From Octopus sinensis (taxonomy: Eukaryota): a DNA stretch of 64,000 nt. The notes under the pieces were generated by a model. That model saw only the letters and a program-made list of their open reading frames with translations, did no database searches and was not told the DNA's origin. Numbering within the stretch: the stretch's first letter is position 1; every line of letters begins with the position of its first letter. The DNA lies in NCBI RefSeq assembly GCF_006345805.1, contig NW_021835954.1:1-64000 (forward strand). Direction: 5' to 3'. A program made the position numbers and the translations under genes. Below, one piece after another: positions 7,490 through 64,000 of this stretch.

Positions 7490-10400
7490 CAGTAGTTTTA
7501 TTTTTATAGCGTGCTTTCACTTCACTACCGAGCGCAGCTCTGTGTGCCATGGGTATGTGCTGTGATTTGTTGTGATGCTCTGATGGTTATTGTATGGAAA
7601 GTGTTCTGCGTAGGATGTGTGCAGTGCCTAGTAGTGCAATTTTCTGTATGTTATATGTGTTTGTAAGTCCTGGTGTTTTTGTTATGTATTTGTCTGAATA
7701 TTTTTTTATCATGCCTAATGCACCTACTATGATAGGAATTGTTTCTGTTTTCAGGTTCCACATTCTAGTTACCTCTATTTCCAGGTCTTTGTATTTTGAG
7801 AGTTTCTCCATTTCTTTTAGAGACACGTTGTCATCTGCCGGTATTGATACATCAATTAGAAAGCATCTTTTTTCTTCATGATCTCTGACAACTATATCTG
7901 GTCTGTTGGCCTTAATTCTCTATCTGTGTGTATCGGCATATCCCAGAGTATGGTTGCTTTCTCGTTTTCTGTGACCTTTTCTGGTGTGTGCCTATACCAT
8001 CTTTTTTCTGTTGTTATTCCATAATGATGGCATAGCTTCCAATGTATGTAGGTTCCAACTCTGTCATGTCTGTGAATATATTCCTTCTTAGCCAGGACTG
8101 GGCAGCTAGAGATAATATGATTTATTGTTTCTTGTCCATCTCCACATATTCTGCAGTTACTTGTAATATTTCTTTTCATTACATGTTTTTGGTAATTTCT
8201 GGTGGGGAGGCTTTGGTCTTGTGCTGCAATTAAAAATCCCTCTGTTTCTGCTTTGAGTCCTGAGCTTCTCAACCATTGCTGGGATTTTTCTTTGTCTATT
8301 TCTTTTGCGTTTAGTTTAGTGCAGTATTTACCATGAAGGGGCTTTTCTTGCCATCGTTTTATCATGGCTCGTTGCTGTTCTATTTTTAGTTTGGATTTCA
8401 TTTGTTTTATAGCTTTTGTTGTTTCTTCATCATCTTCTTCTTCTTTGTGTTTATTAGGTGGTATGATTTCTTGTTTGTATTTGTCAGCTTCCTTAAATAC
8501 TGAGAACAGTTTTTTGTTTTGCTCGTGTTTTGCTGCTATCTGGATCAGTTTTCCTTCCTTCTGAAGTAGGTATTTTTGCAGTCCTATGGTGGTTATTTTA
8601 TAGTAGTTTTCCAGCTGTATAAGGCCTCTACCACCTTCTATACGTTGTATATATAGTCTTTCTATGTCAGATTTTGGGTGATGCATCCTAGATCCTGTCA
8701 GTATTTTTCTTGTTTTCCTATCTATTTTGGACAGTTCATTTCGTGTCCAGTTAAGGATATTGTAGCTGTAACTTATAACTGGGACAGCTAAAGTGTTGAT
8801 ACCTATTATCTTGTTTTTAGCATTGAGCTCTGTTTTTAGTATTGATCTAACTCGTCTATAATATTCTTTTTTTATTTTCTCTTTCATTTGTGTGTGTTGT
8901 GTCTTATCTAGTTCATGGATTCCTAAGTATTTGTAAGTTTGGCTTTGGTCTAATTCTTTTATTTCATTGGTTTTATCTAGTGTGATGTTGTTACTCTTAA
9001 CTAGTTTTCCTCTTTTCATGGTTACTTTGGCGCATTTTTCTAATCCAAATTTCATATCTATTTCTTTGGTAAATCCATGAACTGTCTTTAATAGTGTTTC
9101 CAGCTGTTTGTCATTTGCAGCGTATAGTTTTAGGTCATCCATATATAAAAGGTGGCTGATCGTTTTGCCGTAACATTTATATCCGCATCCAGTTCTATTT
9201 AGCATATCAGATAGAGGTGACAGTGCCAAGCAGAAAAGGAGTGGAGAGAGCGTGTCTCCCTGGAATATTCCTCTTCTAATGGGGATGTCTTTGGTTTTCA
9301 TGAGTCCCTCTTTTGTTTGGAGGTGTAGGACTGTTTGCCATTTATTCATAGAGTGCTCTATGAATTTTATGATTGTTGGTGCTACTTTGTTAATGGCTAG
9401 TGTTTCGAGGATCCATGTGTGGGGGATGCTATCAAACGCCTTTTTGTAGTCAATCCAGGCCATACTGAGGCCTTTCTTCTTTCTGTGGCTGTCTTCAGTT
9501 ACGGCTTTATTAATCATTAGTTGATCTTTACAGCCATATGAGCCCTTGCGGCATCCTTTCTGCTCTTCTGGGAACAGTTTGTTTTCGTCCAGGTGCTTGT
9601 TCAGCCTTTGCGTTATCACTGCCGTAAATGCCTTGAACATAGTAGGGAGGCAGGTTATTGGTCTGTAGTTTTCTGGTTTTGTTGTTTCATTTGATTTGGG
9701 AATTAAGATGGTTTTCCCCTTCGTGAGCCATTCAGGCATTGTCTCTGGCTCTGCTAGTATGCTGTTAAAGTTTTCAGCCAGCTTTTTGTGCATTCCTGTT
9801 AGATATTTCAACCAGAAGTTGGGGATCTTGTCATGCCCAGGTGCCTTCCAGTTGCTTAGTTTTTGCAGTGCCTGGGTGACCTCTTCAGTTGTTATGGGGG
9901 TCCAAAGTTGTTCAGATGCCGAGTTTGTTATTTTCATACTCCTTTTTTTTGGCTGTTCGTTCGCCGACCATATTTCTTTCCAGAATTCTTCCAATTCTTC
10001 TGCCGTTGGTGCTGCAGTGACTTCTATTTTATTTTTGCCCAGTTCTTGGTAGAACTTTTTGAGGTCGGAGTTGAACTTTTTGTTCTGTTCAAAGAAGCGT
10101 TGGCGTTTCACGTACCGGCGGATCCTTTGAGCTTTGGCAAGGATATCTTGCTTCAGTTTTTCTTTTATCTCCGGCAAATCTTTTTCCGTGATGTTATATT
10201 TGCGGAGCATTTTTGTTCTCTTTTTGTTGCTCAGTAGCGTTGCTTGTTTGCTGATTTCATTAAGAATCGACAGGTCTTTTCTAATTTTTTAAATTTTGTT
10301 TTGGATGTTATTTATCCACAGGGTTTGTTTGGGTGGTGGTACTCCTGTTTGGGCGGGTTTGGGTGAGTATCCAGCTTCTTTTGTGGCTGCAGTGGCTGCT

Positions 10401-11494
10401 GCGTATATCAAGTCATTTAGTTCAGTGATATCACTTTTTTTTGTTTCAGTGGCTAGTTCAGTGACGGCTAGGTTATGTTGTTTATAATTGGTGTTGTTAT
10501 TGCGTTTATTTTTATTCTTGGGAGGTATGGTCGGTGGTCCATTTTGAGCTCTGTGGTTTTTAGTTCTTTGATTATTTTATTTTTTATATTATCATAATCA
10601 TTAGGCTCCCCTTCGTTGTTTACATCGTGTTTGTTGGGAATGTTGCGTTTGACTTCGTGTTTTACAGTTTCAGTGTTTATATTATTGGGCATTGTTGTGT
10701 GGCTTCTATCTACATTTTCCTGGTGTATTTTTTCTTTTAAATGTTCTATTTCTATTTCTGATATTTTTTTGGCTTTGAGAATGTATCTTCGTACGTTAGC
10801 TAATTTATTAGGGTTCATTGCTGTATCCAAGTCTATACCTCTATTATTTTCCTTCCATATTTTATATGTATGTGTTGTTGTATTTTCATTTTGTGGGTAG
10901 AGCATTGCTGTGAAGTATGCGTGTAAGATAGAAATGTATTCCTCACGTGTCCATTTACGTCTTTTGGGTTTTAATTGCGGGACATGAGGTACAAAGTCCG
11001 GCCCATTATTTTGACGGTCGTCATTTTCGTAGGGTACCGGTCCGTTTATTTCTGTTGTCACATTATTTCGCACGTGTAGTTTTTCGTACATTTTTTGTTG
11101 TAGGTTTAATGTACGTACCGCTCGATTGTTATTCTTGGGTTGAATAGTATCGGTGGCATTTAATTTCTTCGTAGTTCCTTTGTACATGGTGTTTGAGGTC
11201 GGGGATGATCGTGTTGTTCCACGCATGTTTACATGTGTTGCGTTAGAGGTGGAGATGATATCGAGTCAAAATACATCATTTCGTTTCGAAAATAGTAATA
11301 AATTTCAATTCGTATTACTTACTCGGATATAGTCCAATTCTTTGTTAGTAAATCTTTGGCTCCATAGGGTGTCCTTGTTTTCGATGTTTGTGGATAGATT
11401 TCGGAGCTCTGTATTTTCCTTCTTACATCTTAAACGTCCCCGGTGTCTTCTCTTAAACGTCCCCGGTGTCTTCCTCTTAAACGTCCCCGGTGTC

Positions 11495-23461: not shown

Positions 23462-26400
23462 ATGATCAAGATTGGTTGTAAATGCGCGTGGCTTGGGGTC
23501 CCCTTGGAAACAAGGGTACCTCTTAAATGACATAAAGTCACATAAGTTAGAAATCATAGCCATAAGCGAGACCAGACTCCACAATCCGCGGGCCCTAAAG
23601 ACCATGTTTGGCGGACAGTTCAACATTTATTTTTCCCCCTGTCTGCCGAGAATGGGCGGTAGTGGCACCGCGGTACTTTTTCACAAGAGTCTGGATCTCA
23701 ATGTAAGGACAATATTCGTAGACCCGGAGGGTAGACTGGTCGTCCTGGATGTCGACGGCAGCAATGGGTGCGCTTTTCGACTCGTATCAGTTTACGCACC
23801 CGCCCTTAACAGGTCGGGCGGATTTCTTTCAACGTCTAGAAGTTTTCTTGGGAACGTCTCGTCCTTTACTCTTAGTGGGGGATTGGAATGCTACCTTGGA
23901 CACGCATGTAGACTACGTGGGTAGAGATAGGAATAGACGGGGATGCAAATGCCTCAGAGACCTGCTCAGACGCTTTCAACTGTCTGACAGGTTCGACTAG
24001 ACCACCCGAATGCGCCAACGTGGACATGGAGCAACCGCATCGGGTCGTCGAGATCGTATCTAGATAGGATACTGTGTAGGACAGTAGATAGAGATAGCAT
24101 AGGATGTCCACAATTCCACATAGTCAGCTACACGGATCACAAACTTGTGACATGTACGCTAGACTTAGGTAAGACACTTAGGCAGGGTCCCGGATACTGG
24201 AAACTAAACGCGTCTTTCCCATCGAGACAAGTTTTCAGAGACCGGATTAGCACACTAGTAAAGAGGGCTTTGACGGGAGCCATCATCAACAACAAATGGT
24301 GGTTTGCCCTCAAGAGAGCAGTAAAAGCAGAAGCGATTAGGTACAGCAAAGCACTAGCCATAGATAGAAATAGAGTAGAGGGTGAGCTAGTTAAGAAGCT
24401 AGAAGAGGCAATTAGAAGCGGCATCGCATCCGACGTTTTGGCGGCGAGGTTGGCCCTCGACCAACACTTCAACGCCAAACACGAAGGATGTGCTGTCAGA
24501 GCTAGGATGCGTGCTCTAAGGAACGAAGGTGTTGGAGCCGCGAGAGAGGCCCGGGTGGCAGAGGCGCAACAGGGCAACAAAGCCACCATTCGGTCACTGG
24601 TAGATGAACAGGGGCGCGAATTGCTCGAGCCAAGTAAAATGTGTGAGGCCTTTCAGCAGCATTTTGCCCGACTGTTCGGAACGAGTGGAGGGCAAGAACG
24701 TAGGGTGGACTTCAGTGCCTACCTACATAGCCTACCACGACTCTCGACAAGAAAGGCAGGGTGCTGCGAAGGTGCCATCACGGCGGCGGAAGTGCGGGAA
24801 GCGATGGCAGAATGCTCGAGGGACAAATCACCGGGTTTGGATGGTCTACCCTACGAGCTTTACAATTGTATGCCAGACTTGTTTGGAGATCTCTTGGCGG
24901 CGGTGTACTGCAACTGGCAGCAAAACGGGAGCATTCCTGGTTTTGTGAGCCGAGGAGCCGTAACACTGCTGAAGAAAGATCTAAACAAGGGAAATGTAAT
25001 AGATAACTTTAGGCCCATCACTCTGCTTAATGCAGACTTGAAAATTTTGGCCAAGGTGCTAGCCAAGAGGTTGGCGCTTGTCATCGAGAAACTGGTCGAC
25101 AAGGCGCAAACATGCGCCGTGCCAGGCCGGACCATCCATGACAACCTCCATCTGATGCGCTACATCATAGACAGGGTAGTTAACGAACCTGGCATGGGTG
25201 GGGCCCTGATCAACTTGGATCAATCGAAAGCCTTTATAGGGTAGACCATCGATACTTGGAGGCAGTCCTGAGAGCGGCTGGTTTCGGTCCCGTCTTCCGC
25301 GGCTGGATAGCTGCCTTGTACAGAGGCATCCGTTCGGTAATTCGCGTAAATGGACATCTATCGAGACCTTTCGACATTGCACGTTCGGTCCGTCAGGGAT
25401 GCCCCCTCGGCGCTTCTATACGTATTGACTCTTGAGCCACTACTGCGGAAGCTGGCGACTCTAAGGGGCATCCCGCGAGAATTGGGATGCGGGACGAGCG
25501 TGTCTGCATACGCGGACGACGTCACCGTCATAGTGTCTAGCCACGAGCACATCGAGCTGGTCGGCGAGACACTGAAAAACTACGAAGCGGTGACAGGAGC
25601 GAAAATCAACCGGGAAAAGTCAGTGGGCTTGCGACTAGGCACCTGGAGAAGCAAGCCCATGCCGTCCACCAGCGCCTCCGTCGTGGGACGCTGGACCGAC
25701 GGCCCGGTTGAGTTGCTCGGGGTCTGGTTTGGTCCGGACCTCCAAGTGGAGAAGAACTGGAACGAGATAACGAGTAGGGTGGTCACTCTCGCCCGCAATG
25801 GGCCGAGAGGAAACTGTCCCTAAAAGGTCGAGCGGAGGTGGCGAACACGTACATCGCGTCCGTCATCTACTACCGCCTGACCGTCGTACCTTGTCCCGAC
25901 CCTACCATCACCAAACTACAACGCATCCTCTTTCGCTTCTTGTGGAAAGGATGCGTCCCGATGGTCAGGCGATCCATTTGCTGTCAACACCCGTTAAAAG
26001 GAGGGCTGGGCATGCCGTGGTTTGATGCGCAGACACGCGCTGAGACTGCGACATCTCTGGCTCTATGTAGACGACGGTGAACAGGTGTGGTCGCCGTTTG
26101 TGAGGCACGCTTTCCCGCAGCTCGTCTCCATGACCGAACTGCAGTCGTGGATCAAAAAGAGGCCGAGGAAGGGCGAATGGCACCGCGAGTGTCGCGTTGC
26201 TCTCAAGCAACTCTGCCGTCCTGGGTCGACCTTAAGTGACTTCAACACAACCAAAGCATTCTATAGGGGTTTAGTGGAGGGGAGGTACGACGACGAGCTC
26301 GGGGCGAACCTGGACGTCGACGAGGAGTACCTGACCCGCCTGTTCGGGACGACTTTCGGGCCAGGGCCCATGGACAACTTCCAGAGATCCCTGGCCTGGC

Positions 26401-26889
26401 AGTGCTACCGAGAAGCGCTACCCGTTCGGGATAAGCTCTACAGACACGGCTCGAGAAACACGGGGCCGACCTGCCCGAGATGCGGTCAGAGCGACGAAAC
26501 CGTTCTGCACGCACTCGTTCAGTGTCCAACAATTTCCGACCTGTGGGCTTATGTCGAACAACTGCTGTCACGTGTGGGACGAGTCGGTTTATCAGCTGTC
26601 TATCGTCAATATTGTCACGCCTCCTTCCTTCAAACGGGAAGGAAGAGCTATTTTCATCATCCTTGTGGCTATGGCGAAAGAATGTATCTGGTGGACGCGT
26701 CTGAAAGGATTGGAGACAAACACTTTCCTCTCTGGTCAATCTCTCATCAACTTCTTCAAGTACCACTTGAAAAGGAAAGTGAGAGTAGAGAGGCAAGTTT
26801 TGTCTAGCGAATGTTTTAAAAAAAGATGGGTGAATGTAGCAAGAATGGCACGTATGAATGACGAAGCCACCTTGAGCATAGTCCTATGA
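23462..26889 (+). pseudogene. Tx1 ORF2 (APE endonuclease, RT, C-terminal zinc finger), frameshifted
   Basis: NARGL...IAISETRL, LLVGDWNA, KSPGLDGLPYELY, NFRPITLLNADLKILAK, LINLDQSKAF, SAYADDVTV, CPRCGQSDETVLHALVQC. Confidence 0.9.
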
Positions 26890-39019: not shown

Positions 39020-39883
39020 CATACAAAGTTATAGAAAGTGTACAGAGAGGAGTATGAGTCGCACACAAATGTACCAGTGGTTCAGACGCATCGTTGAAAC
39101 AAATCAGCGTCGTCTTGTCACTTGACGCGCTTTTGGCGGGCGTGGAGACATTGAATGCTTCCATTGACTTCATTGCTGCTTCATTTCCGGCTCGAAACCG
39201 CAGCCGCAGCTTTCGTCACCAGTGATGACCTTCGAAAAAAGTTTCGGACCAACTTCAGACTGTTCTTTCTGTTCACGACACGCACTCAGTCGTGACTGCT
39301 TTTGATCTTCTATGAGCAAGCAAGGCACAAATTTTGCTGCAGTTCTTTTCATTCGCAATTCCTCGTTCAAAATTCGTTGGCGGGAGCCCCAGGACACACC
39401 AGTCAAATCAACAAGTACATCAATTGTTCGACGACGGTCCTCCAAGATCAGTTCATGAATTTTCGTGATATTTTCATTCGTTCGGGAGGTCAACGGTCGC
39501 TGTGAATGAGGTTGGTCTTCAAGTGACAAGTGATCATTCCTAAGGTGTGAAAACCACTCATAAACTTGTGTTTTGCTCATGGCAGTGTCCTAGTAAGCTG
39601 TTAGAAGCATGTCACCTGTTTCGGCCGCCGTTTTCCCCAGCAGAAAAACAGAATTTCACGGAAGCATACTGTTTCTTCGTTTCATCCATCGCAAAAATCG
39701 ACGAAATGACGAGAAGCACTGCAAAGCAATGACGCAGCACGTGGCAGTACGACTCCAGCCGACGACGCCGGTCGACAGACTGATGCCTGAGGATCGCATC
39801 AAGTGGCTTCTAGCAGCGGAAGCCTGAATTACAACGAGCATGTCCCACAGAGAACGTTTCCAGTTACTTTTGGGTACCACTCG
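39020..39883 (-). mobile_element. Mariner transposon 5' part, rearranged
   Basis: TA|CGAGTGGTACCC terminus at 39883; MSKTQVYEWF...AAKFVP...KVITGDES...KTTLICF. Confidence 0.85.
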
Positions 39884-55463: not shown

Positions 55464-56028
55464 TTGGGTTGTCCGGAAAGTTCGTGCCGATTTATAGTAG
55501 CTTACTTTTCGACTTATTTTAGAACATGGTTGAGTCCATAAAATAGGATTTGACTACACCTCTATTAAGAGCACAGTTTAAGCTATCTTTTCATGGAAGA
55601 AGGTTTATGTTCCTATAACCTGTGTTAATTCTGTAACCCTTTAAAATGGAAAGTAAGAAAGCTCATTTTCGGCATTTGATGCTTTGGGAACCAGACAAAA
55701 ATTGCTGCAGCTCGGCTGGGATGTGTTACCCCACCCTCCATATTCACCAGATATTGCTCCTTCGGATTTCCTCTTATTCAGGTCTCTGCAGAATAGTCTT
55801 AATGGTAAAAATTTCAATTCCTTGGATGATGTAAAAAGATACTTTGATGAATTCTTTGCCTTGAAAGCACCGCAATTCTGGGAAGAGGGTATTTTCAAGT
55901 TAAAGGAAAGATGGAGACGCATTGTGAAACAATATGGTTATATTTGGTTGATTAAAAATGTAAAGGCAAATATTTATTGACCTTTTTCTTTCCATTAAAA
56001 ATCAGCATGAACTTTCCGGACAACCCAA
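55464..56028 (+). mobile_element. Internally deleted mariner (565 bp) with both TIRs
   Basis: 30-bp TIRs with 2 mismatches, TA flanks. N-terminus MESKKAHFRHLML joined to C-terminus LPHPPYSPDIAPSDFLLFRSLQN. Confidence 0.92.
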
Positions 56029-57022
56029 TATAACCCCTTTAATTCTCTATATCATTTGTATTCTGTGTAAGTCGGACCTTTTTCTATACATACATGTATA
56101 TAATTTTTGTATTTCATACATTTAATATACTTTATATATTGATCTGTCTAATTTGCTTATCCCTACATTTACCCCTATACTCACTCAAATTTAAATCACT
56201 TGAACATTCCGAATGAATAAGGGGATGCAATCCAATGGTAGAAAGAATTCTACAAATTAGGTTCTACAAAGCTAGTCAGAAGGGCAAGGGTTCATGTGAG
56301 CGTGCGGTAAATAGTTAATAAAAAATAAACAGGAAAAAAAGGACAAGAAAAAAATCAACAACATGAGGATGTAGTACATGCAAAATGTGGGTGTGGGTCT
56401 TTTTGTTTTTGATGTTGCATGATGTTTATAAATGAGTGTCACCGTCACACAAGCAGAGTCATTCATTTCCAATGATGTGCTTGGACATGTCAAAGCATGA
56501 GGAAATATTAGCTTGCTTGGAAACAGGTGAGAGTTGGTGACAGGAAAGGCATCCAGCCGTAGAAAATGTACCTTAGCAAACTCCGTCTGGAAAAGTGGAT
56601 GTTAAAACAATTAAGATGATGGATGTGAAGGGTTTGTTGGTGGTGGTTGTTGTTAAGCAACAAGATGGGTAAGGGTGATGGTCTAGGGCTTAGGGGTGGG
56701 AGACCCCAGACCTTGGGGTAAAAAAAAAACTTTGGTCGTCTTGTTGTAGTCGAGGGCTCTTCGTTGACGCTCGACACCACTGGGAGGTGGCTCTCAAAGT
56801 TGCTGGAAATGGAGATCTCCAGGTCCAAATTCTTGAACGGCTGTTGGTGGTGGTGGTGGTGGTGGTGCTGCTGCTGCTGCTGATGATGATCATGATCACC
56901 ACCACCACCACCACCACCATCACCATCATCACCATCACCACCAATAATAACAACAGCAACATCCTAATTGTTTTTAATAGCTATGCATGCAGTAATGCTA
57001 GATACAGCTTCAACGAAACCTT

Positions 57023-57696
57023 TCACAGACATGCACACTGGACGGCCACCATGTCACCGAACCGTTTTGATATGGTTACATTATGTTTGTTCCGATAAAG
57101 CACAGTCAGTGCACTCGTCTGGATGGGGACACAAAACGGCGCCGGAATACTGGGATCAAGGGTAGCAACAATTGCATACTTGCTGCGCATTAACGCATGG
57201 TTAGTTGAGTTAATTTGCTCCAAGTTTGTTGGACATTTTCCAGAACAATAGTTAGCATTGTATCCGACAGGTGCATAAATTATATTATGCCAACCAATTT
57301 CTACAAAGCTAACATACCATGAAGTTAAATGGCAATTGACTTGAACTGATTCTGAAGAATTCGATGGTGGTGTGGTACTTGCATTTATGGTGCCATTAGC
57401 TCTCGTTGTTGTATCTTGAAGTGGTGATTCTGATGCCAATTGTACACGACGTTTCTTGCGAAGATTATTGCTGCTTATATTAAATGGTTCGATGTTTTCG
57501 TATATTACCAAAAGAGGGCACTTCCTATTTGTTCTTTCAAACAAGCAGGAATGATTTTGGGGATTCAGCAAAAGAGAAGATTCTATGGTGAAGTTTAATA
57601 TGGTCTTCTTCAGAGCAAAACTTTGCAAAACCATGTCAGTGACGTTTATTACATAAAACGAAGAATTGCTTCTCGGGGAAACTTGGACAAAAACGC
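57023..57696 (-). CDS. TGF-beta/BMP-family ligand, last coding exon (end of prodomain, furin site, mature cystine-knot domain)
   Basis: Open frame from acceptor ttatattttcag|GC at 57696 to TGA at 57023. Encodes FYVINVTDMV (prodomain FDVT-like motif), RKKR furin site and CHLTSWYVSFVEIGW...APVGYNANYCSGKC...STNHA...IPAPFCVP...DMVAVQCACL, which aligns with the BMP2/4-type mature domain. Orthology cannot be assigned by eye. Confidence 0.92.
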
Positions 57697-60883: not shown

Positions 60884-60962
60884 CTCTAATGTTGAAGAAC
60901 ATCGAGAGAGAGCTAATTCCATATGAGTTATTGTTTCGTTAAGGGGTTGGCAACTTACATTG
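60884..60962 (-). pseudogene. 79-bp partial duplicate of the TGF-beta prodomain exon, in the downstream intron
   Basis: Same orientation as 62032-62110, with 5 mismatches in 79 bp (NVSCQPLNETITHMELALSRCSSTLE). Confidence 0.85.
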
Positions 60963-61374: not shown

Positions 61375-61830
61375 ATGCTGCCACCGCCACCGCCACCACC
61401 ACCACCACCCCACCACCACCACCATCACCACCACCACCACCACCACACCACCACCATCATCACCACCACCATTACCACCGCCACCACCACCGCCACCACC
61501 ACCACCACCAGCACCATCACCACAATCACCACCACCACCACCACCATCATCACCACCACCATTACCACCACCACCACCACCACCACCGCCACCACCACCA
61601 CCGCCACCACCACCACCACCACCACCGCCACCACCGCCACCGCCACCACCACCCCACCACCACCACCACACCACCACCACCACCACCACCACCACCGCCA
61701 CCACCACCACCACCGCCACCGCCACCACCACCACCGCCACCACCACCACACCGCCACCATTATCATCCCCGTCATTGTCGTCCTCTTCTTCGTCGACGTC
61801 ATCATCATCATCATCATCGTTTCCAACCAC
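61375..61830. repeat. Imperfect (CAC/CGC/CAT)n low-complexity tract in the TGF-beta gene intron
   Basis: Direct reading. Confidence 0.95.
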
Positions 61831-61934: not shown

Positions 61935-62138
61935 TGTCAATTGGTTGTGAGCCATCCATCGCCATGGAAACGGTCATGTTAACATCCGACATTATGCTTT
62001 TAAGTTGAGAAGATCCTGTGGGGTCGAATGGCTCTAATGTTGAAGAACATCGAGAGAGAACCAATTCCACGTGAGTTATTGTTTCATTAAGGGGTTGGCA
62101 ACTTACATTGAACACCAAATTCTGCAGTGTAGATTTTT
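61935..62138 (-). CDS. TGF-beta/BMP-family ligand, prodomain exon (204 nt, phase 1/1)
   Basis: Acceptor atcccccaacag|AA at 62138 and donor GACA|GTAAGT at 61935. Encodes KSTLQNLVFNVSCQPLNETITHVELVL...GSQPID, matching the BMP propeptide motif FFNLSSIP..E.ITSAEL. Its last base A plus GC of the 57696 exon gives an in-frame Ser. Confidence 0.82.
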
Positions 62139-64000
62139 CTGTTGGGGGATAAAAAAAATGGACAAAGATTAATAATCATTAACATCATCATCATCATCAT
62201 TTAACGTCCGCTTTCCATGCTAGCATGGGTTGGACGATTTGACTGAGGTCTGGCGAACCAGACTCCAATCTGATCTGGCAGAGTTTCTACAGCTGGATGC
62301 CCTCCGTAACACCAACCACTCCGAGAGTGTAGTGGGTGCTTTTATGTGCCACTGGCACGGGGGCCAGTTTAGTGGTACTGGCAATGGCCATGCCCAAATG
62401 GTGCTTTTTATGTGCCACCTGCACAGGAGCCAGTCCAGCGGCACTGGCGACGACCTCGCTCAAATGTTTCACATGCCACCAGCACAAATGCTAGGAAAGC
62501 GACGCGGTAACGATCACACTCGGATGGTGTGCTTAACATGCCATCGGCACGAAGGCCAGCTTGTTGCTCTGGCAACGATCTCACTCGTATGGTACTCTTA
62601 GCGCACTTTTCCATACTTGGAAGGGCAGGATGAAGTTTATTGAAGCAGTCTCTGGCTTGATGCCCCTCCTGCCCTCTTGTTGTCAACCCTCACCTGTTTG
62701 CAAACAAGGCAATATTTCTCCATGGCCTGACATGATTTCACAGAATATTAAAAACGGATAACACTGAGCCTTACAAAGGAGATGAAAAAGGACCAAGATA
62801 TCTGGCACCTTGCTGTACTCAGGAAGACCTGGCCACCACAGCAGAATTGATACTGGTGTTGGCTCCACATAAAAAGTTCTCATGTTTGTACCACATTAAC
62901 CTTTAGCACACTGTAGGTCCATCATGTCACTAAATGAGTTTTCTCCCTTGTAGTAAGAGGACATAACTACACAACCATGCTGGCACCAATTCATGAATAA
63001 AAATTATGAGGAAGAATTCTGTAAATTCTTTTAATCATATAGACAATAGAATGGCAATCAGAAGTAGAACACATCTATAGGATGTATGTGTTGGCATCAT
63101 TGGCCAAATATACTTTCTACATACAAAGAAAATTAACTGTCAACAGAAATTCTCATATCATGCCTTAATCTAAATGATTTAACTGGTGCACAGGAGATTA
63201 TAATTAAAATAATATGATGACATGTTTTGCAATTAATATTTATCTCTTATTTTAATCAATTTTGTCTCTTATTGCATAATATGAGAAGAACTGTATCAGA
63301 AAATGTTAGATATGATAGAATATTCTAATGTAACATGCACCTCTCTATAATTTGGCTTTACTTTAAAGATCCATTTTCCTTAAAAGGTCTCCTTAAAAGG
63401 TCCATTCTCATTTGCTGTTTCTAAGTCCACTTAATCTCTCTACTGTGGAAACAGCTGAAAATTAGAATTTAATCACAAGAAAGCAAAGCAGGAAATAAAT
63501 GCCTTCTTGTATTTGTGAGGGTCTGAATTCTAATTCAAAATGCGGAATGCATTGTGGTTATTATTGGTGGGCATTTCAAATTATGCCTGTCTCTCTTACA
63601 AATACTTACTCTTTATTTGGTTACTTGCTGCACCACATATCAGGCCACATTGGATATTTCCAGTAGCATATCAATTTTCCCTACAAGAAGGGTTAGGGTT
63701 AGCTGCTCACTCAACCTTTCTCCATAATTATAGAAAGAAATGCTTTGAGCATTCCCTGCGATATATGTCTATATATATCAAACAGAAGCCAATTTTGTGC
63801 AGTGGTATATTATCCATGTGTTTTTATATTTGATCCAGCATGAACTTCATTTTAGATATTTACATGGACTTGAGTCCCCTATCCAAATTTTTTTATGAGA
63901 ATAAATAACAACGAAAGCTTAATATGATTAAATCACATTGGATCTTAGCAGTCATGTTTTCAGCTCATTGCTAACACAATGTCCTACTCAAACCAATTCT

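What the first reader, a model, noticed from the sequence alone, without database searches (positions are those of the whole stretch)
57023..57460. BMP-like ligand lacking the dimer disulfide cysteine and with altered receptor-binding residues
Seen: the mature domain has six Cys; the usual PCCVP is PFCVP (codon TTT at 57134-57136). By manual alignment to BMP2, W31 is Ile, the pre-helix loop is one residue shorter (CPTNLEQINSTNHA), L100 is Ser and S88 is Thr. A ~38-aa Ser/Thr-rich extension with three N-glycosylation sequons lies between RKKR and the first Cys. Established: BMP2 Cys78 forms the interchain bond; GDF3, GDF9, BMP15 and Lefty lack it and act as non-covalent dimers, heterodimer partners or antagonists. 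W28/W31 line the type I receptor site and L90/L100 the type II site. Inference: a divergent, possibly lineage-specific invertebrate ligand that may be a non-covalent or inhibitory BMP. Caveat: TTT differs from TGT by a single base.
Basis: partly seen in the sequence, partly recalled or inferred. Interest (0 to 1): 0.75.

Follow-up and report, generated by a model that had tools for sequence, protein, structure and literature searches.

The report
Cephalopod BMP-like ligand lacking dimer cysteine
This is the last exon of a real, conserved octopus gene for a secreted growth factor of the TGF-beta/BMP superfamily in which the cysteine that normally bonds the two halves of the dimer is replaced by phenylalanine in every cephalopod copy found. 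It is therefore a genuine lineage-specific variant rather than a sequencing error, but of a kind already known from GDF9, BMP15, GDF3 and Lefty.

Summary
Window 57023-57696 (-) is the last exon of a three-coding-exon TGF-beta gene. It is 100% identical to the automatic NCBI model 'BMP4-like isoform X2' of Octopus sinensis.

The mature domain has six Cys, with Phe (TTT, 57134-57136) where the interchain Cys should be.
- Phe is present in five independent DNA sources, coded TTT or TTC.
- These include Argonauta hians and a spliced 505-aa mRNA from a more distant, unidentified sample.
- dN/dS in the knot domain is 0.05-0.09.

An exhaustive HMMER search finds a sharp gap (E 4e-89, then 1e-27), so this is a discrete clade. 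It is about 40% identical to everything else.

Family-HMM scores and neighbour-joining bootstraps ally the mature domain with a loose lophotrochozoan group. That group includes Lingula 'GDF3-like', a Ridgeia protein and the scallop gonadal 'AMH-like' genes, and it has lost the same Cys repeatedly. The prodomain, however, looks most like BMP2/4.

Non-covalent dimerisation is a strong inference. Agonist versus antagonist is untested. This is a new member of a known kind, of moderate interest.

The parts
57023..57696 (-). Last coding exon, including the stop codon at 57023-57025. It encodes the C-terminal part of the prodomain, the furin site and the whole mature ligand. It starts in phase 1 after the acceptor ttttcag.
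   Evidence: Sequence and translation. tblastn with P0001 and P0003. 100% identical to the NCBI O. sinensis protein P0001.
57449..57460 (-). Furin-type cleavage motif RKKR, followed by a further Arg at 57446-57448.
   Evidence: Translation. R-x-K-R is invariant in the aligned orthologues: RKKRR, RWKRR, RRKRR and RRKRD in P0005.
57335..57448 (-). 38-residue Ser/Thr-rich N-terminal extension of the mature ligand, with three N-glycosylation sequons (NGT, NAS, NSS).
   Evidence: Translation. Fastest-evolving segment: omega 0.40 against another Octopus. Length varies between orthologues.
57026..57334 (-). 103-residue cystine-knot domain with six Cys.
   Evidence: PF00019, E = 3e-24. Best solved relatives are BMP6 and BMP2, E about 2e-21. 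omega 0.049 and 0.061.
57134..57136 (-). Phe codon TTT at the position of the interchain (BMP2 Cys78) cysteine.
   Evidence: The same position is TTC in L002, TTT in L001, TTC in the L003 mRNA and TTT in Argonauta L004.
57281..57283 (-). Ile codon at the position of BMP2 Trp31, the second Trp of the W-x-x-W motif.
   Evidence: Alignment. This column is I, N or V only in the cephalopod clade. It is W in 153 of 164 sequences, and F or Y in the other four non-cephalopod exceptions.
61935..62138 (-). Middle coding exon: 204 nt, in frame, acceptor ccaacag, donor gtaagt. It encodes prodomain residues EKSTLQNLVFNVSCQPLNETITHVELVLSRCSS... and is skipped in NCBI isoform X2.
   Evidence: tblastn with Argonauta P0003, 57% identity, E = 4e-21. 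Frame check. The same exon is present in Argonauta genomic DNA and in the 505-aa mRNA.

Best explanation
What it is. The region is the 3' exon of an intact, selectively maintained gene for a secreted TGF-beta-superfamily pro-protein of the BMP class. The gene belongs to a clade found so far only in cephalopods: Octopus, Argonauta and two more distant, unidentified lineages.

How it most likely works:
- The protein has a signal peptide and a BMP-type prodomain.
- It is cut at RKKR by a furin-type convertase.
- This releases a glycosylated ligand of about 140 residues whose six Cys form the three knot disulfides.
- The seventh, interchain Cys is a fixed Phe, so the ligand cannot form the usual covalent dimer.
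- It most likely acts as a non-covalent dimer, either with itself or with another BMP-class ligand. The Phe would pack into the hydrophobic dimer interface.
- The altered type I receptor ('wrist') surface comprises the lost second Trp and a pre-helix loop one residue shorter. This predicts receptor preference or affinity unlike BMP2/4.

Shown: the gene is real, the Phe is conserved, selection is purifying, the mRNA is spliced in a relative, and the clade is discrete.

Inferred: non-covalent dimerisation, the role of the Phe, and altered receptor use.

Origin. The mature domain groups best with a loose lophotrochozoan set of ligands that share CxLxxWYVxF, NHA[FY]xKSxY, xCVPI and MVAxxCxC. That set includes Lingula 'GDF3-like', a Ridgeia protein and probably the scallop gonad-expressed 'AMH-like' genes, and it has lost the interchain Cys repeatedly. 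I put this placement at about 0.5.
For: Gene identity and structure:
- PF00019.
- 100% match to NCBI O. sinensis P0001.
- Three coding exons, conserved in Argonauta genomic DNA.
- PF00688 propeptide at 37.7 bits in the 505-aa orthologue.
- The prodomain profile matches BMP2/4 prodomains: hhalign probability 98%, E = 8e-14.

The Phe is real:
- PFC is present in P0001 to P0005 and in seven further cluster members.
- Codons are TTT, TTC, TTT, TTC, TTT in five DNA sources.

Selection: knot-domain omega is 0.049, 0.061 and 0.094.

Expression: L003 is a 1593-nt contig carrying the uninterrupted 505-aa CDS, whereas genomic contigs of the same cluster break at the exon-3 boundary.

Discrete clade: E = 4e-89, then 1e-27. 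Clade bootstrap is 87-94%.

Affinity of the mature domain:
- Cephalopod knot domains score 101-114 bits against an HMM of the lophotrochozoan group built without them. They score 82-92 bits against BMP2/4 and 77-86 bits against BMP5-8.
- Of the human ligands tested (GDF9, BMP15, NODAL, GDF3, GDF15, AMH, INHA, INHBA, GDF8, TGFB1, BMP3, GDF5, BMP9), all but AMH score better against the BMP2/4 HMM. AMH is within about 1.4 bits either way.
- In 232 of 300 neighbour-joining bootstraps, the sister of the cephalopod clade consists only of members of that group.

A separate canonical Bmp2/4 exists in cuttlefish (PMC6581508).
Against: - No protein-level data exist. Dimer state, receptor use and direction of signalling are all untested.
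- No expression evidence was obtained for O. sinensis itself. The exact products are not on record in the transcript-bearing collection.
- Identity to the lophotrochozoan group (35-42%) is no higher than to BMP2/4 (37-41%).
- Bootstrap for the joint clade is only 21-32%.
- All these sequences sit on long branches, so the grouping may be attraction.
- The prodomain matches BMP2/4 better than it matches that group.
- The species behind P0002, P0004 and P0005 are not identified, so 'coleoid-wide' is an inference from similarity.
- The AlphaFold model was unusable, mean pLDDT 53.5.
Confidence: 0.72

Rival explanations
1. Artefact or decay. The TTT is a one-base assembly error for TGT, or the locus is an unexpressed, decaying BMP paralogue.
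For: TTT and TGT differ by one base. The window is rich in repeats and retrotransposons.
Against: - Phe is coded in five independent DNA sources from at least four species, with both TTT and TTC.
- The reading frame is intact in all of them.
- omega is 0.05-0.09 in the knot domain.
- A spliced mRNA exists in a relative.
Confidence: 0.02
2. Origin rival. The gene is a cephalopod-specific, fast-evolved duplicate of BMP2/4 (dpp), as the NCBI names suggest. On this view its resemblance to the Lingula, Ridgeia and scallop ligands is convergence or long-branch attraction.
For: - The best scallop hit by raw phmmer score is BMP2/4, 63-73 bits.
- The prodomain profile is closest to BMP2/4 prodomains.
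- The exon-1/exon-2 junction falls where the ...TVRSFHH... stretch of BMP2/4 prodomains aligns. From memory, the conserved BMP2/4 intron lies there.
- Bootstrap for the alternative grouping is weak.
Against: - The BMP2/4 HMM scores 10-32 bits lower than the HMM of the lophotrochozoan group.
- The sister group lay wholly outside the lophotrochozoan and other divergent-ligand classes in only 6 of 300 bootstraps.
- Several derived motifs are shared with the other group: Trp five residues after the first Cys, NHAxxRSxY, xCVPI and MVA.
Confidence: 0.3
3. Functional rival. The ligand is mainly an antagonist or modulator. It would bind type II receptors or other ligands without productive type I recruitment, as proposed for BMP3, GDF3 and Lefty, rather than signalling itself.
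For: - The second Trp of the type I site has been replaced by a non-aromatic residue, uniquely in this clade.
- The pre-helix loop is shorter.
- There is no covalent dimer.
- From established knowledge, BMP2 wrist mutants that keep type II binding act as antagonists.
Against: - Purely sequence-based.
- GDF9 and BMP15 also lack the Cys and are agonists.
- The knuckle residue L100 is also changed (S, T or A), which argues against simple type II sequestration.
Confidence: 0.25
4. It is the divergent cephalopod orthologue of Nodal.
For: - NHA[FY]I[KR]S and a non-Ala residue before the conserved Pro in several relatives recall Nodal.
- One member of the related group has scallop NODAL as its best scallop hit (P0013).
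Against: - Scallop NODAL (7 Cys...RHHEDMVVEECGCR) scores better against the BMP2/4 HMM than against the group HMM.
- Scallop NODAL and human NODAL fall outside the group in the neighbour-joining tree.
- Gastropod Nodals keep seven Cys (PMC9907556).
- Cephalopod identity to NODAL is 27-33%.
Confidence: 0.06

Closest known systems
GDF9 / BMP15 (vertebrate oocyte factors)
   Same: Six-Cys mature domain without the interchain Cys, forming non-covalent homo- and heterodimers.
   Different: They have Ser, not Phe, at the position, and they keep both Trp. Identity is 28-35%. Both score better against the BMP2/4 HMM than against the group HMM. They join only at an unsupported deep node. No orthology is claimed.
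GDF3 (and Lefty) as Cys-less modulators
   Same: The interchain Cys is missing; GDF3 has Val. They are described as BMP inhibitors or Nodal-type co-ligands (established knowledge).
   Different: GDF3 is otherwise a close relative of GDF1/Vg1 and scores 143 bits against the BMP2/4 HMM. By my recollection, Lefty also has a longer C-terminus and a different helix region. Here the protein ends C-x-C-x, like the BMPs.
Scallop 'AMH-like' TGF-beta genes (Ai/Cf/My TGFB-11 and -12; PMC10763453). Probably also oyster gonadal TGF-beta-like, which is recalled from memory and was not checked.
   Same: - Molluscan and BMP-like, but orphan.
- CHLQPWTLDF-type start and YAYLKNLY helix.
- Prodomain motif PLLVVFENID..F, against cephalopod PLLVIYENIEPF.
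- One copy (Ai11) has also lost the interchain Cys, to His.
- The best prodomain profile match of the scallop genes is the cephalopod clade: probability 92%, E = 7e-8.
- They score 21 bits higher against the group HMM than against the BMP2/4 HMM.
   Different: Only 28-32% identical in the knot domain. Most copies keep CC. In the neighbour-joining tree they sit with human AMH and inhibin-alpha, not directly with the cephalopod clade. Gonadal expression is known only for the scallops.
Lingula anatina 'GDF3-like' XP_013394129 and Ridgeia piscesae KAK2178947, with unnamed relatives P0009, P0013, P0019, P0042, P0044, P0087, P0104 and P0105
   Same: Shared motifs CxLxxWYVxF, NHA[FY]xKSxY, xCVPI[RKQ] and MVAxxCxC[LM]. 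The interchain Cys is replaced by H, L, R, Y, T or S in most members but kept in P0042 and P0087. They form the sister group in 77% of bootstraps.
   Different: They keep the second Trp, or an aromatic residue, at that column. None has Phe. Identity is 35-42%. I found no literature describing them.
BMP2/4 (Dpp)
   Same: Best-scoring solved structures and best scallop hit. Similar N-terminal prodomain: alpha-1 helix, the PxYMLxLY motif and the FNVSxIP strand. The NSTNHA glycosylation site is shared.
   Different: 37-41% identity. No CC, no second Trp, different pre-helix loop and an extra intron. Cephalopods have a separate canonical Bmp2/4 (PMC6581508).

Membership tests
TGF-beta superfamily ligand | C-terminal TGF_beta domain (PF00019) above the Pfam threshold | tested here: met
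   86.1 bits against a cutoff of 27, covering the full profile 1-104.
TGF-beta superfamily ligand | Six knot cysteines in canonical spacing (C...CxGxC...C...CxC) | tested here: met
   All six are invariant across orthologues and relatives.
TGF-beta superfamily ligand | Prodomain plus a dibasic furin site upstream of the mature domain | tested here: met
   RKKR is conserved. PF00688 scores 37.7 bits in P0005, 21 bits (below threshold) in Argonauta, and is not detected in O. sinensis. hhalign against BMP2/4 prodomains gives 98% probability.
Covalently dimeric ligands (most BMPs, activins, TGF-betas) | Seventh Cys (BMP2 Cys78) that forms the interchain disulfide | tested here: not met
   Phe in all 12 cephalopod sequences seen.
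BMP2/4 (Dpp) orthology group | Groups with BMP2/4 in trees and best match to a BMP2/4 profile; CCVPTELS and W-x-x-W motifs | tested here: not met
   The BMP2/4 HMM scores 82-92 bits, against 101-114 bits for the other group. The sister group was essentially never outside the divergent-ligand classes. The motifs are absent.
BMP2/4 (Dpp) orthology group | BMP2/4-type prodomain | tested here: inconclusive
   The N-terminal half matches BMP2/4 prodomains best. It also matches scallop 'AMH-like' and Ridgeia prodomains at similar single-sequence scores.
GDF9/BMP15 | Six Cys with Ser at the interchain position, and grouping with GDF9/BMP15 | tested here: not met
   Phe, not Ser. Identity is 28-35%. 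The two groups join only at a node with 4% bootstrap.
Nodal | Groups with Nodal; seven Cys; ...HHxDM[IV]VEECGC C-terminus | tested here: not met
   PMC9907556 for gastropod Nodals.
Lophotrochozoan 'WY' group (a working name of this report, not a published family) | Motifs CxLxxWYVxF, NHA[FY]xK/RSxY, xCVPI and MVAxxCxC, and a better score against the group HMM than against canonical families | tested here: met
   Motifs are present. The score advantage is 10-32 bits over BMP2/4, and the control human ligands behave the opposite way.
Lophotrochozoan 'WY' group (a working name of this report, not a published family) | Supported monophyly with the group | tested here: inconclusive
   The sister group is composed only of group members in 77% of bootstraps, but the joint clade itself has only 21-32% support. 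Only neighbour joining was used, on about 102 columns.
Non-covalent dimeric ligand (functional class) | The dimer dissociates without reduction | not testable with these tools
   Needs recombinant protein.

The most novel reading that the evidence does not exclude
The cephalopod gene is the coleoid representative of an unrecognised, ancient family of BMP-class ligands. The family would be lophotrochozoan, with a possible amphioxus member (P0011). It would include the gonad-expressed scallop 'AMH-like' genes and probably oyster gonadal TGF-beta. The interchain cysteine has been lost many times independently in this family. It would be an invertebrate counterpart of the vertebrate GDF9/BMP15/AMH type of non-covalent reproductive signals. 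In cephalopods the vacated position was then fixed as Phe as part of a remodelled dimer and receptor interface.
Probability: 0.3. Interest if true: 0.6.

Novelty: new member of a known kind. Interest (0 to 1): 0.4.

Why it matters
TGF-beta ligands without the interchain cysteine are few. Those that have been studied (GDF9, BMP15, GDF3, Lefty) all act in unusual ways: as non-covalent heterodimers, latent forms or antagonists.

A ligand of this type, under strong constraint across deep cephalopod divergences, adds an unstudied component to cephalopod BMP-type signalling. Automatic annotation currently hides it under the name 'BMP4-like'. Anyone who interprets BMP ligand expression, knock-downs or Noggin-bead experiments in cephalopods should know that this second, atypical ligand exists.

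The recurrent loss of the same cysteine in related lophotrochozoan ligands is a natural experiment on how far the covalent bond is dispensable. The possible link to the mollusc gonadal TGF-beta genes gives a testable lead on function.

Tried and rejected
- **Word-indexed protein search with alignments.** It returned almost nothing beyond the query families, so no named mollusc relatives were obtained.
- **The listing of cluster members.** Most relatives are unnamed Logan or ENA sequences. Only Lingula, Ridgeia, amphioxus, an acoel ADMP and a few others carry names.
- **AlphaFold2 on a 10-sequence alignment.** Mean pLDDT was 53.5, so the model was not used and no fold search was run.
- **Species behind SRR8281669, SRR11869384 and ERZ21867824.** A literature search found nothing.
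- **Expression in O. sinensis.** The exact products are not on record. The gonad transcriptome paper's supplements do not mention the gene.
- **Supplement searches.** The Lingula BMP paper's supplements and the EGF-CFC/Nodal paper gave no usable sequences.
- **Nodal orthology.** Considered because of the NHA[FY]I motif, and rejected.
- **AMH relation.** Human AMH is the only human ligand that does not prefer the BMP2/4 HMM, but the margin of 1.4-4.8 bits is too small to use.

Full report
**What is at the coordinates**

On the minus strand, 57023-57696 is an exon that opens after a ttttcag acceptor and runs to a TGA stop at 57023-57025. It encodes the end of a prodomain, an RKKR furin motif (57449-57460), a 38-residue Ser/Thr-rich stretch with three N-glycosylation sequons, and a 103-residue cystine-knot domain.

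- Pfam TGF_beta matches end to end (E = 3.1e-24).
- The closest solved structures are BMP6 and BMP2 (E about 2e-21).
- The exon is 100% identical to the NCBI protein 'bone morphogenetic protein 4-like isoform X2 [Octopus sinensis]' (P0001).

tblastn with the Argonauta orthologue found a second coding exon at 61935-62138. It is 204 nt long and in frame, with ccaacag and gtaagt boundaries. NCBI isoform X2 skips this exon. Exon 1 lies beyond base 64000. Argonauta hians genomic DNA shows the same three-exon structure within 4.2 kb.

**Checking the observation**

- There are six Cys.
- PFCVP has TTT at 57134-57136.
- Ile sits at the BMP2 Trp31 position.
- The pre-helix loop is one residue shorter.
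- Thr is at S88 and Ser at L100.
- 38 residues lie between RKKR and the first Cys.

The pattern is not chance. In an alignment of 164 mature domains, Phe at the interchain column occurs only in this clade, and 136 sequences have Cys. A non-aromatic residue at the second Trp column is also unique to this clade.

**Is the Phe real, and is the gene alive?**

The word-indexed search found three further proteins. The exhaustive HMMER search added a 505-aa one (P0005), and its cluster holds seven more members. All twelve have P-F-C.

| Source | Phe codon |
|---|---|
| Window | TTT |
| L002, another Octopus, genomic, 88% nucleotide identity | TTC |
| L001, 127-kb ENA contig | TTT |
| L003, mRNA | TTC |
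| Argonauta L004 | TTT |

A synonymous difference at the very codon rules out a shared assembly error.

Nei-Gojobori dN/dS in the knot domain is low in all three comparisons:

- 0.049 for O. sinensis against L002
- 0.061 for O. sinensis against Argonauta
- 0.094 for L001 against L003

The prodomain and the N-terminal extension are less constrained (0.13-0.56).

L003 is a 1593-nt contig that carries the whole 505-aa reading frame without introns. Genomic contigs of the same cluster read through the exon-3 boundary instead. The orthologue is therefore transcribed and spliced. I could not obtain expression evidence for O. sinensis itself.

**How isolated is it?**

Searching a profile of the four orthologues against 1.84 billion representatives gave three clusters at E <= 1e-30 (5e-168, 1e-107, 4e-89). 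The next hit falls to 1.3e-27, where generic BMP-class ligands begin.

Knot-domain identity to anything outside the clade is about 40% or less:

- BMP2/4: 37-41%
- BMP6/7: 36-38%
- NODAL: 27-33%
- GDF9/BMP15: 28-35%

The clade has 87-94% neighbour-joining bootstrap support. Cuttlefish have a separate canonical Bmp2/4 (PMC6581508). This gene is therefore not the cephalopod Dpp orthologue.

**Nearest relatives**

Among the next-best hits is a set of ligands that share several derived motifs with the cephalopod clade:

- Trp-Tyr five to six residues after the first Cys (CxLxxWYVxF)
- NHA[FY]x[KR]SxY in the helix
- xCVPI[RKQ]
- MVAxxCxC[LM]

The named members are Lingula anatina 'GDF3-like' and a Ridgeia piscesae hypothetical protein. 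An amphioxus protein (P0011) is similar.

Most members lack the interchain Cys, with H, L, R, Y, T or S in its place. P0042 and P0087 nest among them and keep CC. The Cys has therefore been lost repeatedly.

I took the scallop ligand sequences from Table S1 of PMC10763453. Two points follow.

- The scallop NODAL-like gene is a different thing: seven Cys and ...RHHEDMVVEECGCR.
- The scallop 'AMH-like' genes resemble the cephalopod and Lingula/Ridgeia sequences. That paper reports them as gonad-expressed. They have CHLQPWTLDF, YAYLKNLY and a PLLVVFENID..F prodomain end.

**Quantitative tests of placement**

*Family HMMs built without the cephalopod sequences.* The four cephalopod knot domains score:

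- 101-114 bits against the Lingula/Ridgeia group
- 82-92 bits against BMP2/4
- 77-86 bits against BMP5-8

Scallop My12 'AMH-like' scores 84 bits against the group HMM and 64 bits against BMP2/4.

As controls, human GDF9, BMP15, NODAL, GDF3, GDF15, activin, GDF8, TGF-beta1, BMP3, GDF5 and BMP9 all prefer the BMP2/4 HMM. Human AMH is neutral. The preference is therefore not a general property of divergent sequences.

*Neighbour joining.* In 232 of 300 bootstraps the sister of the cephalopod clade consists only of members of that group. In 6 of 300 it lay wholly outside the group and the other divergent-ligand classes.

*Against this placement:*

- The joint clade itself has only 21-32% support.
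- Pairwise identities are no higher than to BMP2/4.
- All these sequences sit on long branches.
- The prodomain profile matches BMP2/4 prodomains best (98%, E = 8e-14). BMP5-8 follows (95%) and scallop 'AMH-like' next (91-92%).
- Conversely, the best prodomain match of the scallop genes is the cephalopod clade.

I therefore treat the placement as the better of two hypotheses, at about 0.5. A cephalopod-specific BMP2/4 duplicate stands at about 0.3.

**Mechanism**

From established knowledge of the superfamily, the six conserved Cys make the intrachain knot and the seventh makes the only interchain bond. With Phe there, a covalent homodimer is impossible. The ligand must act as a non-covalent dimer, as a heterodimer partner or, less likely, as a monomer.

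The position drifts freely in the related lophotrochozoan ligands. Across the cephalopod sequences, whose synonymous sites are saturated (dS about 2.3 between Octopus and Argonauta), it is invariably Phe. This suggests that the side chain has acquired a role, most simply hydrophobic packing at the dimer axis. This is inference.

The type I receptor surface is remodelled. The second Trp is I, N or V, and the pre-helix loop is shortened. The type II 'knuckle' residue L100 is S, T or A, whereas L90 is kept. These changes predict receptor use different from BMP2/4. They do not tell agonist from antagonist.

The AlphaFold monomer model was too poor to use (pLDDT 53.5).

**Comparison and novelty**

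As a kind, a TGF-beta ligand without the dimer cysteine is known: GDF9, BMP15, GDF3 and Lefty. This gene is not a member of any of those families (see the membership table).

It is present in NCBI only as an automatic 'BMP4-like' or 'BMP2-A-like' model. I found no paper that describes it, or the Lingula/Ridgeia-type ligands.

I rate it a new member of a known kind, of moderate interest. The more novel reading is an old lophotrochozoan family of gonad-linked, recurrently Cys-less ligands. The evidence does not exclude it, but the present trees cannot establish it.

Noticed in passing
window 60884-60962 (-), compared with 62032-62110 (-): A 79-bp fragment of the middle coding exon is duplicated in the downstream intron at 93.7% identity. 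It translates to ...NVSCQPLNETITHMELALSRCSSTLE but has no exon context.
   Followed up: partly
window 61400-61830 and 56830-56960: A long (GGT/GGC)n microsatellite lies in the intron between the middle and last exons. An (ATC/ACC/GCT)n tract starts about 60 bases after the stop codon, in the probable 3' UTR.
   Followed up: no
window 7892-11226 (-): An apparently intact non-LTR retrotransposon. It has a 772-aa ORF with RVT_1 (E = 1e-32) and zf-RVT, preceded by a 252-aa ORF1-like frame.
   Followed up: partly
window 23472-26807 (+): A second, frame-broken LINE. An Exo_endo_phos endonuclease piece, two RVT_1 pieces and zf-RVT sit in separate frames. GC content is 0.54, against about 0.40 around it.
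   Followed up: partly
window 39170-39580 (-) and 55684-55980 (+): Short ORFs that look by eye like mariner/Tc1-type transposase fragments (e.g. ...HPPYSPDIAPSDFLLF...). There was no Pfam hit at E <= 0.001.
   Followed up: partly
L004 about 9760-10345 (Argonauta hians BAAFZT010000031.1): The NCBI Argonauta model P0003 starts at an internal Met (MVEHYLL...). The reading frame continues upstream to an earlier Met with a hydrophobic, signal-like stretch, so the deposited model is truncated at the N-terminus.
   Followed up: partly
window 61935-62138 (-): NCBI 'isoform X2' of O. sinensis skips this in-frame 68-codon prodomain exon. Argonauta and the 505-aa mRNAs include it. Whether the skipped form is real or a modelling artefact is unknown.
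   Followed up: partly
proteins P0009, P0013, P0017, P0019, P0022, P0044, P0077, P0104, P0105; scallop AiTGFB-11: In the lophotrochozoan ligands nearest to this gene, the interchain Cys is replaced by seven different residues (L, R, H, Y, T, S and, in cephalopods, F). Close relatives P0042 and P0087 keep CC. This points to recurrent loss.
   Followed up: partly
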